Below are positions 809 through 47,580 of a stretch of DNA of 49,689 nucleotides, in pieces. Positions within the stretch are counted from its first letter, which is position 1, and every line of letters begins with the position of its first letter. The notes beneath the pieces are model-generated. The model was not told the origin of the DNA. It worked only from the letters and a program-made list of their open reading frames with translations, and made no database searches. Source of the stretch: Octopus bimaculoides (Eukaryota). The stretch lies in contig NC_069003.1 of assembly GCF_001194135.2 (NCBI RefSeq), forward strand, positions 34,104,907-34,154,595, written 5' to 3'. Both the position numbers and the translations under genes were made by a program.

Positions 809-949
809 TGTTTTCTGATCTTTTCCCAGTCTTGTTTTACGTATTTCCAGATAATATCTGCCCCAATGGGGTTTGAACTGATGCCACTAATAACAGTATT
901 GAAATCTTGGGCACGGATTTCTTCACCTTTCATTGCTGTTAATAAGAAT
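809..949 (-). CDS. Module 2 exon [46 protein letters not shown]
   Basis: IRxQD...NPxG...W....W motif; ends in phase 2, so further exons are required. Confidence 0.95.

Positions 950-47580: not shown

What the first reader, a model, noticed from the sequence alone, without database searches (positions are those of the whole stretch)
809..47580. Single gene encoding two complete M1 aminopeptidases in tandem behind one membrane anchor
Seen: what looks like two neighbouring aminopeptidase genes splices into one frame. Module 1's C-terminal exons (16146-16301, 15314-15386, 14087-14199) contain no stop and end in canonical donors with chaining phases (2, 0, 2). They join the first exon of module 2 (13376, phase 2) as ...[23 protein letters not shown] found no start or signal anchor for module 2; the only anchor is exon 1 at 47418-47580. 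Established: APN, ENPEP, ERAP and TRHDE are single-module enzymes, and somatic ACE (family M2) is the classic two-domain precedent. Inference: this is a roughly 1,780-aa ACE-like double M1 ectoenzyme, an architecture I do not know to be characterised.
Basis: partly seen in the sequence, partly recalled or inferred. Interest (0 to 1): 0.9.

Follow-up and report, generated by a model that had tools for sequence, protein, structure and literature searches.

The report
Octopus gene with two tandem aminopeptidase modules
This Octopus bimaculoides gene really does splice two full aminopeptidase-N-like units into one membrane-anchored protein, but public databases already hold that gene model, and many invertebrates have similar predicted (so far unstudied) proteins.

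Summary
I rebuilt the gene on the minus strand: 21 exons for module 1 and 17 for module 2, all with AG/GT borders and one open frame. The donor CAA|GTAAGA at 14087 joins the acceptor at 13376 in phase 2, giving ...[22 protein letters not shown].

The spliced product is 100% identical to RefSeq XP_014776693.1 (LOC106873725, Octopus bimaculoides, 1692 aa), so the fused model is already annotated.

Support from other species:
- O. sinensis (1798 aa), an O. vulgaris fragment and Argonauta hians carry the same junction.
- Intron-free RNA contigs of about 6 kb, from public sequencing runs of two unnamed species, encode module-by-module orthologues (1820 and 1827 aa). The fusion therefore exists on mRNA in related species.
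- The Met before RLP is not conserved, and module 2 has no anchor exon of its own.

Caveats:
- One 66-nt exon of module 2 lies in the gap at 6070-6539.
- The last two exons of module 2 lie beyond the window.
- Module 1 is degenerate: AGMEN instead of GAMEN, and the catalytic Tyr is lost in octopods. It may not be an active enzyme.
- No O. bimaculoides RNA was inspected directly.

Multi-module M1 proteins are common in invertebrate gene models. I found no paper that describes them. Interest is moderate.

The parts
47418..47580 (-). Exon 1: ATG at 47580, basic cytoplasmic tail, the single transmembrane signal anchor; donor in phase 1
   Evidence: identical to the N-terminus of XP_014776693.1
35626..35977 (-). 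Module 1 exon 2 (start of the M1 N-terminal domain, LFPVKY...)
28696..28851 (-). Module 1 exon 3
28371..28488 (-). Module 1 exon 4
28073..28190 (-). Module 1 exon 5
26654..26850 (-). Module 1 exon 6: AGMEN (variant of GAMEN), 14-aa insertion, HEVIH
26362..26475 (-). Module 1 exon 7: WIGNVVT...WLIEG (third zinc ligand Glu, 18 residues after HEVIH)
25529..25627 (-). Module 1 exon 8: 99 nt instead of 135; the catalytic Tyr of FDxISYxKG is absent (INIQ|GPL)
24611..24676 (-). Module 1 exon 9
24327..24392 (-). Module 1 exon 10 (the counterpart in module 2 is lost in an assembly gap)
23583..23731 (-). Module 1 exon 11
22212..22291 (-). Module 1 exon 12
21580..21701 (-). Module 1 exon 13
20874..20929 (-). 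Module 1 exon 14
19689..19836 (-). Module 1 exon 15
18894..18970 (-). Module 1 exon 16
18036..18146 (-). Module 1 exon 17 (conserved Cys-x6-Cys)
17236..17400 (-). Module 1 exon 18
16146..16301 (-). Module 1 exon 19 (skipped in O. sinensis isoform X2)
15314..15386 (-). Module 1 exon 20
14087..14199 (-). Module 1 exon 21: ends at the natural C-terminus of an aminopeptidase N (...ELSY + 2 bases of a Lys codon); donor CAA|GTAAGA in phase 2
13377..14086 (-). Linker intron (710 nt). It holds an in-frame TAA at 14085-14083 on read-through, a SINE-like repeat, one ATTAAA at 13476-13471, and the polypyrimidine tract. It holds no anchor exon.
12969..13376 (-). Module 2 exon 1: Lys-rich linker KKKTLSAK, a non-conserved Met, RLPKDLIP, start of the second M1 N-terminal domain; acceptor in phase 2
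11913..12071 (-). Module 2 exon 2
10879..10996 (-). Module 2 exon 3
10356..10476 (-). Module 2 exon 4
9300..9454 (-). Module 2 exon 5: canonical GAMEN and HELAH
8546..8659 (-). Module 2 exon 6: WFGNLVT...WLNEG (third zinc ligand)
7974..8108 (-). Module 2 exon 7: FDDISYNK with the catalytic Tyr
6614..6679 (-). Module 2 exon 8
6070..6539 (.). Assembly gap that hides one 66-nt phase-0 exon of module 2 (22 aa, QRYISQHSYRNAQHNDLWMALT in O. sinensis)
5529..5698 (-). Module 2 exon 10
5222..5331 (-). Module 2 exon 11
4779..4906 (-). Module 2 exon 12
4404..4459 (-). Module 2 exon 13
3995..4142 (-). Module 2 exon 14
2972..3027 (-). Module 2 exon 15
2432..2551 (-). Module 2 exon 16 (conserved Cys-x6-Cys)
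1522..1692 (-). Module 2 exon 17
809..949 (-). Module 2 exon 18, the last one in the window; donor ACA|GTAAGC in phase 2. The two final exons (75 aa in O. sinensis) lie beyond the window.

Best explanation
The window holds Octopus bimaculoides gene LOC106873725, a single transcription unit on the minus strand.

**Gene structure.**
- One first exon supplies a type II signal anchor.
- Twenty further exons encode a complete M1 module (N-terminal domain, catalytic domain, ERAP1-like C-terminal domain).
- The last of these exons ends exactly at the natural C-terminus of an aminopeptidase N.
- There is no stop and poly(A) site that is used there. Instead, a strong phase-2 donor overlapping the old stop position (AA|GTAAG) is spliced over a 710-nt intron. 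It joins the acceptor of what used to be exon 2 of a tandem duplicate.
- The result is a Lys-rich linker of about 9 residues followed by a second M1 module.

**Protein (inferred).** It is a glycoprotein of about 1,790 aa whose two modules both face outwards (or into the lumen).
- The membrane-distal module 2 has every catalytic element of an aminopeptidase N and is most likely the active exopeptidase.
- The membrane-proximal module 1 keeps the zinc ligands. It has AGMEN for GAMEN, a 14-aa insertion next to the active site, and in octopods no catalytic Tyr.
- Module 1 is therefore likely a weak or inactive, substrate-binding or spacer module.
- This would make the protein a covalent version of the dimers that APN, IRAP and ERAP1/ERAP2 form.

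**Shown versus inferred.** Shown here: the gene structure, the in-frame junction, the domain content, the motifs, orthology, and mRNA in related species. Inferred: use of the junction in O. bimaculoides itself, the topology, and the division of labour between the modules.
For: **Gene model.**
- There are 38 exons with AG/GT borders and one frame.
- Exon sizes and intron phases are the same in both modules and in a Lottia APN gene, so the modules are tandem paralogues.
- Pfam finds M1_N + M1 + ERAP1_C in each module.
- The spliced product is identical to XP_014776693.1 / A0A0L8H0V2, and the gene span is the same.

**The same junction in other octopods.**
- O. sinensis XP_029650203.1 and XP_029650204.1.
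- O. vulgaris CAI9739507.1.
- Argonauta hians GAB1610746.1.

**mRNA evidence in related species.**
- Contigs SRR24189489_1671, SRR24189495_54661 and SRR24189497_4016 are 5.85-6.4 kb long and carry an uninterrupted 5463-nt reading frame.
- For SRR24189489_1671 (the one checked) there is an in-frame stop upstream of the ATG and a 3' UTR with AATAAA.
- A second species gives 1827-aa products on dozens of contigs.
- These proteins align with the window's protein in one stretch (residues 33-1711, 40% identity).
- They are orthologous module by module: 35% and 46% identity against 28-29% across modules, with 100% bootstrap for each module.

**Module 2 has no independent start.**
- The Met before RLP is Lys, Pro or Trp in the orthologues.
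- There is no anchor exon in the spacer.
- Splicing exon 1 (phase 1) directly to 13376 (phase 2) would be out of frame.

**Other points.**
- Donor and acceptor are as strong as the gene's other splice sites.
- Both conserved cysteine pairs, which I recall form disulfide bonds in APN, are kept in both modules (read from the translations and the conserved columns). This fits a secretory location.
Against: - No RNA-seq or Iso-Seq read of O. bimaculoides across 14087/13376 was examined. The RefSeq and GenBank entries are predictions.
- If the donor is skipped, TAA at 14085-14083 ends a perfectly normal 900-aa aminopeptidase.
- An ATTAAA followed by a T-rich stretch lies 607 nt further on, at 13476. 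A module-1-only transcript is therefore possible.
- The organisms behind the RNA contigs are not named in the records I could read. Their assignment as relatives rests on the trees alone.
- The functional split between the modules is inferred from motifs only.
- Module 2 is incomplete in this assembly.
Confidence: 0.88

Rival explanations
1. Both products are made. Most or some transcripts splice 14087 to 13376 and give the two-module protein. Others are cleaved and polyadenylated inside the linker intron, use TAA 14085-14083, and give a 900-aa anchored protein with module 1 only.
For: The in-frame TAA follows directly after the donor. Module 1 ends where single-module aminopeptidases end. ATTAAA at 13476 is followed by a T-rich tract. 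O. sinensis already has two annotated isoforms, so splicing at this locus varies.
Against: Any phase-2 GTAAG donor gives such a TAA; the donors at 16146 and 809 do the same. About one AATAAA or ATTAAA is expected by chance in 710 AT-rich bases (my own estimate from base composition). None of the RefSeq, GenBank or RNA-contig products retrieved ends at the module 1 C-terminus.
Confidence: 0.15
2. These are two separate tandem genes. The fused model is an artefact of gene prediction or of rare read-through transcripts. Gene 1 ends at TAA 14085-14083, and gene 2 is translated from the ATG at 13349 (MRLPKDLIP...) or from an undetected first exon.
For: The TAA lies at the canonical C-terminus. An ATG sits one codon before RLP with A at -3. 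Tandem M1 genes are common, and merged models of neighbouring genes are a known type of error. Some multi-module models in the databases, with 3 to 9 modules, may be of that type.
Against: - Intron-free mRNA contigs of orthologues carry both modules in one frame in many runs.
- The Met is not conserved.
- The 710-nt spacer, one third of it a repeat, has no anchor exon and leaves almost no room for a promoter.
- An out-of-frame ATG at 13469 would precede the Met on an unspliced RNA.
- Without a signal, module 2 would be cytosolic, yet it keeps both conserved cysteine pairs.
- The linker is conserved among octopods.
Confidence: 0.05
3. There is one promoter and one anchor exon, but two alternative single-module proteins. 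Exon 1 would be spliced either to module 1 or, skipping 34 kb, directly to module 2.
For: Only one anchor exon exists. Module 2 begins with an acceptor homologous to that of module 1 exon 2.
Against: The exon 1 donor is in phase 1 and acceptor 13376 is in phase 2. The join shifts the frame and reaches a stop within a few codons, as read from the sequences. No such product is among the database proteins retrieved.
Confidence: 0.02

Closest known systems
RefSeq XP_014776693.1 / UniProt A0A0L8H0V2 (LOC106873725, Octopus bimaculoides); orthologues XP_029650203.1 and XP_029650204.1 (O. sinensis) and GAB1610746.1 (Argonauta hians)
   Same: It is the same gene. The product is 100% identical and the gene span is the same. 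The O. sinensis protein is 90.3% identical with an identical linker.
   Different: Nothing differs biologically. The O. bimaculoides model is truncated by assembly gaps: 22 internal and 75 C-terminal residues are missing, and its stop at 805-807 is a read-through of the donor at 809. All of these entries are predictions, named inconsistently (uncharacterized, TRH-degrading ectoenzyme-like, leucyl-cystinyl aminopeptidase-like).
Aminopeptidase N / CD13 (M1 family; human APN structure 4FYQ) and the oxytocinase subfamily (ERAP1, ERAP2, IRAP)
   Same: Module 2 matches human APN at 484 bits (E 7e-144) and module 1 matches ERAP2 and APN at about 247 bits. Each module has the same three Pfam domains. 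The N-terminal type II anchor is as in APN. Module 2 has GAMEN, HELAH-18-E and the catalytic Tyr.
   Different: Every solved M1 chain retrieved holds a single module. Here two modules are joined covalently. Module 1 has AGMEN, an insertion, and no catalytic Tyr. From my own knowledge, APN and IRAP form non-covalent homodimers and ERAP1/ERAP2 a heterodimer. Here the pairing, if any, would be within one chain.
Somatic angiotensin-converting enzyme (M2 family), two homologous catalytic domains from an internal gene duplication (my own knowledge)
   Same: It is a tandem duplication of a whole zinc-peptidase unit within one membrane-anchored ectoenzyme.
   Different: The family is different (M2, not M1). 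The ACE anchor is C-terminal (type I). Both ACE domains are active, whereas here the first module looks degenerate. This is an analogy only.
Carboxypeptidase D (M14 family), three tandem carboxypeptidase domains of which the third is inactive (my own knowledge)
   Same: It has repeated metallopeptidase units on one anchor, one of which has lost catalytic residues.
   Different: The family, the fold and the anchor position all differ. This is an analogy only.
Other predicted multi-module M1 proteins: Haliotis asinina XP_067653450.1, Solemya velum KAL5020570.1, Littorina saxatilis XP_070173543.1, Sepia pharaonis CAE1229509.1 (with matching 1932-aa RNA contigs), Acanthaster planci XP_022081852.1, three-module proteins of Hymenoptera
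   Same: The modules are joined head to tail, from the natural C-terminus to the RLP start, with a single N-terminal anchor or signal.
   Different: Most are independent duplications, in which the modules of one protein are each other's nearest relatives. Only the first module of Solemya groups with module 1 of the octopus gene (87% bootstrap). Some of these may be merged gene models.

Membership tests
M1 aminopeptidase (APN/oxytocinase type): module 2 | Pfam Peptidase_M1_N + Peptidase_M1 + ERAP1_C in this order | tested here: met
   E-values 1.5e-43, 7.9e-69 and 8.5e-65, all above the curated cut-offs
M1 aminopeptidase (APN/oxytocinase type): module 2 | GXMEN exopeptidase motif | tested here: met
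   GAMEN in exon 9454-9300
M1 aminopeptidase (APN/oxytocinase type): module 2 | Zinc motif HEXXH followed 18 residues later by Glu | tested here: met
   HELAH ... WLNEG
M1 aminopeptidase (APN/oxytocinase type): module 2 | Catalytic Tyr (FDxISYxKG) | tested here: met
   FDDISYNKG
M1 aminopeptidase (APN/oxytocinase type): module 2 | Aminopeptidase activity | not testable with these tools
   needs an enzyme assay
M1 aminopeptidase (APN/oxytocinase type): module 1 | Pfam Peptidase_M1_N + Peptidase_M1 + ERAP1_C in this order | tested here: met
   E-values 1.1e-28, 7.9e-34 and 1.3e-50
M1 aminopeptidase (APN/oxytocinase type): module 1 | GXMEN exopeptidase motif | tested here: not met
   AGMEN: the first Gly is Ala. 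The orthologues show the same change.
M1 aminopeptidase (APN/oxytocinase type): module 1 | Zinc motif HEXXH followed 18 residues later by Glu | tested here: met
   HEVIH, then 18 residues, then the E of WLIEG
M1 aminopeptidase (APN/oxytocinase type): module 1 | Catalytic Tyr (FDxISYxKG) | tested here: not met
   EINIQ|GPL has no Tyr. The exon is 99 nt instead of 135. The Tyr is also absent in O. sinensis and Argonauta, but present (LAYEES) in the RNA-contig orthologues.
Type II membrane ectoenzyme | A single N-terminal uncleaved signal anchor with a short basic cytoplasmic tail | tested here: met
   Exon 1 reads [22 protein letters not shown] + [25 protein letters not shown]. No dedicated topology predictor was available, so this is read from the sequence.
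Two-module M1 protein (single polypeptide) | Both modules in one reading frame on one mRNA | tested here: inconclusive
   Met for orthologues, whose RNA contigs carry an uninterrupted 5463-nt frame. Met for the gene models of four octopods. O. bimaculoides RNA itself was not available.
Merged model of two separate genes (artefact) | The downstream unit has its own conserved start codon, first exon or promoter | tested here: not met
   The Met is replaced by Lys, Pro or Trp in orthologues. There is no anchor exon in the 710-nt spacer or elsewhere in the window.
Somatic ACE-type two-domain enzyme (M2) | Peptidase_M2 domains | tested here: not met
   Only M1-family domains were found. The resemblance is an analogy of architecture.

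The most novel reading that the evidence does not exclude
Cephalopods carry an old, stably inherited two-module M1 ectoenzyme. Its membrane-proximal module has become a zinc-binding pseudo-peptidase (AGMEN in all orthologues; catalytic Tyr lost in octopods). That module would work as a built-in partner of the distal, fully catalytic module, capturing, measuring or gating peptide substrates. The protein would be a covalent counterpart of the ERAP1/ERAP2 heterodimer. Tandem M1 modules would then be a recurrent, functional and so far undescribed theme in invertebrates, rather than annotation noise.
Probability: 0.3. Interest if true: 0.55.

Novelty: already known. Interest (0 to 1): 0.35.

Why it matters
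**For the scan.** It also predicted the protein length correctly.

**For biology.**
- M1 aminopeptidases are studied as single-module enzymes that act as dimers.
- Here a covalent two-module form is backed by mRNA in related species and conserved across octopods.
- Similar predicted proteins occur in other molluscs, echinoderms, insects and spiders. Some of those are backed by RNA contigs.
- Six literature searches found no paper that mentions the architecture.
- The degenerate first module offers a natural test of whether one M1 unit can serve as a non-catalytic partner of another.

The gene is already annotated, and the finding opens no long-standing question, so its interest is moderate.

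Tried and rejected
1. A database search with a junction-spanning peptide found nothing, because the two flanking regions are too divergent for the word index.
2. A search with module 2 returned only single-module APNs of 38-42% identity and no cephalopod. I first took this to mean that cephalopods were absent from the database. That was wrong: by phmmer, P0122, P0124 and P0135 (857-982 bits) outscore its best hit of 544 bits. These proteins, and the octopus ones, surfaced only through the exhaustive profile search and a search with P0135.
I used an alignment of returned homologues instead.
4. Picking exons from open frames by eye gave wrong frames for short exons, for example 3027-2972 and 20929-20874. 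I replaced this with my own spliced profile aligner and removed its spurious micro-exons by hand.
5. I looked for the last two exons of module 2 in 1-808 and in the 9 kb beyond the window. They were not found. A weak resemblance at about 470-560 is out of phase and was rejected.
6. I considered a shared first exon with alternative modules and rejected it on intron phase.
7. I considered the hydrophobic reading frame from ATG 13469 as a hidden signal peptide. It is the translated polypyrimidine tract in the wrong frame.
8. Six literature searches found nothing on tandem M1 modules or on SRR24189489. Two candidate papers turned out to concern the M10 and M12A families.
9. The intron 1 reading frames that look like a transposase gave no Pfam hit.
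10. The Lottia gene model lacks its 5' exon, so the ancestral phase of the intron before the RLP exon could not be read.

Full report
**What the window is.** The window is 49,689 bases, 38% G+C, with nine runs of N. It is identical at all 49,689 positions to Octopus bimaculoides assembly GCA_001194135.2, chromosome record CM046623.1. The feature lies on the minus strand.

**Checking the observation.**
- Joining 14087 to 13376 gives ...[38 protein letters not shown]... in one frame.
- The donor is CAA|GTAAGA. If it is not used, the frame reads AAG TAA, so a stop lies at 14085-14083.
- Aligned with mollusc aminopeptidases, ELSYK falls at their natural C-terminus.
- Sequence alone therefore allows two readings: a fusion, or two genes. 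This had to be settled by other evidence.

**Gene model.**
- I built a profile from 60 mollusc aminopeptidase N sequences found.
- I wrote a spliced profile-to-genome aligner and curated its output.
- Module 1 has 21 exons, from the ATG at 47580 to 14087. Module 2 has 17 exons in the window, from 13376 to 809.
- All 38 exons have canonical borders, and the concatenated frame is open.
- Exon sizes and intron phases match between the two modules and with a Lottia gigantea APN gene. The modules are therefore tandem paralogues that share an ancestral exon structure. They are only 26% identical to each other.
- Pfam finds Peptidase_M1_N, Peptidase_M1 and ERAP1_C once in each module.
- Exon 1 encodes a basic tail and the only hydrophobic anchor.
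- Neither the 710-nt spacer nor any other part of the window holds a second anchor exon.

**Assembly gaps.** I compared the model with O. sinensis isoform X1 (1798 aa, 90.3% identical).
- The only large differences are 22 residues that fall in gap 6070-6539 and 75 C-terminal residues.
- The 22 residues correspond to a 66-nt phase-0 exon, the counterpart of module 1 exon 24392-24327.
- The 75 C-terminal residues are found neither in 1-808 nor in the 9 kb beyond the window. The assembly has another gap directly adjacent to the window.
- All other gaps lie in introns and hide no coding segment.

**Is the junction used?**
- *Splice sites.* Scored with matrices built from the gene's other splice sites, the donor at 14087 ranks 15th of 38 and lies in the top 0.7% of all GTs on this strand. 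The acceptor at 13376 ranks 18th of 37 and lies in the top 1.3% of AGs.
- *Alternative splicing from exon 1.* The exon 1 donor is in phase 1. Skipping module 1 by splicing exon 1 directly to 13376 would therefore shift the frame.
- *Profile search.* An exhaustive profile search of 1.84 billion representative proteins put multi-module M1 proteins at the top.
- *RNA contigs.* One of these, P0135 (1820 aa), and two near-identical cluster members come from assemblies of sequencing runs SRR24189489, SRR24189495 and SRR24189497. Their contigs are only 5.85-6.4 kb long. Each carries an uninterrupted 5463-nt reading frame. In the one contig I read through (SRR24189489_1671) there is an in-frame stop before the ATG and a 3' UTR with AATAAA. 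The octopus gene has about 40 introns over 47 kb, so these contigs must derive from mRNA.
- *Orthology.* P0135 aligns with my fused protein in a single stretch (residues 33-1711, 40% identity). It is orthologous module by module: 35% and 46% identity against 28-29% across modules. In a neighbour-joining tree, each module pairs with its counterpart at 100% bootstrap.
- *Second species.* A second cluster, 67% identical to P0135, has 1827-aa products on dozens of contigs of up to 7 kb.

**The gene is already annotated.**
- A search with P0135 returned XP_014776693.1, 'uncharacterized protein LOC106873725 [Octopus bimaculoides]' (UniProt A0A0L8H0V2), of 1692 aa.
- My model is identical to it in all 1692 residues, once the gap exon is skipped and the donor at 809 is read through to TAA 805-807.
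- Its recorded gene span of 46,776 nt equals window positions 805-47580.
- O. sinensis XP_029650203.1 and XP_029650204.1 carry the identical linker [22 protein letters not shown].
- O. vulgaris fragment CAI9739507.1 runs across the junction.
- Argonauta hians GAB1610746.1 has ELSYDKKKILSASKRLPQD.
- The Met before RLP is Lys in Argonauta and Pro or Trp in the RNA-contig orthologues. It is therefore not a conserved start codon.

**What the two modules look like.**
- Module 2 is canonical. It has GAMEN, HELAH, WLNEG and FDDISYNKG, and its best solved relative is human aminopeptidase N (4FYQ, 484 bits).
- Module 1 keeps HEVIH and the Glu 18 residues later. It has AGMEN instead of GAMEN, as do all its orthologues.
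- Module 1 also has a 14-aa insertion between the two motifs. In the three octopods it has no Tyr at the catalytic position; its exon 8 is 99 nt instead of 135. The RNA-contig orthologues still have the Tyr.
- Module 1 matches ERAP2 and APN at only about 247 bits.
- Both conserved cysteine pairs are kept in both modules. This is read from the translations and the conserved columns. That these pairs form disulfide bonds in APN is from my own knowledge.

**Most likely mechanism.** I propose a type II membrane glycoprotein of about 1,790 aa. The distal module would be the active aminopeptidase. The proximal module would be a weak or inactive binding or spacer unit. Together they would form a covalent analogue of the dimers formed by APN, IRAP and ERAP1/ERAP2. 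That those enzymes dimerise is from my own knowledge, and the division of labour is inference.

**Origin (inferred).** A partial tandem duplication started in intron 1 of the downstream copy. The sequence AAG TAA G at the upstream stop then served as the donor AA|GTAAG to the next acceptor.

**How common the architecture is.**
- About 40 of the best 150 profile hits have two to nine M1 modules.
- Named examples are Haliotis asinina, Solemya velum, Littorina saxatilis, Ostrea edulis, Sepia pharaonis (with matching 1932-aa RNA contigs), Acanthaster planci, and three-module proteins of Hymenoptera and spiders.
- In all twelve two-module proteins whose domain limits I mapped, the next module begins at the RLP start, right after the natural C-terminus of the previous one.
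- The trees show several independent duplications. Only the first module of Solemya groups with octopus module 1, at 87% bootstrap.
- Some of these models may be merged genes.
- Six literature searches found no description of tandem M1 modules.

**Rivals.**
- An additional module-1-only isoform, ending at the TAA and polyadenylated near the ATTAAA at 13476, cannot be excluded.
- Two fully separate genes are unlikely, given the orthologous mRNAs, the non-conserved Met and the lack of an anchor or promoter space.
- Alternative use of exon 1 with either module is excluded by phase.

**Verdict.** The gene model is already public but uncharacterised. Two caveats apply to 'two complete aminopeptidases': module 1 is catalytically degenerate, and module 2 is incomplete in this assembly. 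The missing direct test is junction reads from O. bimaculoides RNA.

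Noticed in passing
window 13349-13469 (minus strand): A 64-codon reading frame starts at ATG 13469 ([31 protein letters not shown]...). It overlaps acceptor 13376 and the Met at 13349 in another frame. It is the translated polypyrimidine tract. On an unspliced RNA it would act as an upstream overlapping reading frame.
   Followed up: partly
window about 39650-41330 (minus strand, intron 1): Several open frames of 80-125 codons look like the remains of a transposase. 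None had a Pfam match.
   Followed up: partly
window about 13650-13895, 15130-15300, 45040-45320: Copies of a SINE-like repeat lie in introns, one of them in the linker intron. Abundant (TATG)n, (CA)n and (CAT)n microsatellites translate to long His, Cys-Val or Tyr-Ile runs.
   Followed up: no
window 805-809; also 14083-14087 and 16142-16146: Every phase-2 donor of the form xx|GTAAG gives an in-frame TAA when read through. The stop of the RefSeq model (805-807) is such a read-through stop. It arises because the true last exons are missing from the assembly.
   Followed up: yes
window 16146-16301: The counterpart of this 156-nt exon is skipped in O. sinensis isoform X2 (XP_029650204.1). This removes 52 residues of the module 1 C-terminal domain in frame.
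   Followed up: partly
L005 61710-66776 (outside the window): A WD40-repeat gene lies on the opposite strand about 5 kb beyond the end of the aminopeptidase gene.
   Followed up: no
tool behaviour: The word-indexed protein search with module 2 listed neither the two-module proteins tested (857-982 bits by phmmer, against 544 bits for its best hit) nor any cephalopod protein. 'No close relative' from that tool was misleading here.
   Followed up: yes
proteins P0278, P0281, P0387: Cephalopods have a second, separate two-module M1 gene in which both modules are canonical. It is seen in Sepia pharaonis CAE1229509.1, in Argonauta hians, and in 1932-aa products on many RNA contigs.
   Followed up: partly
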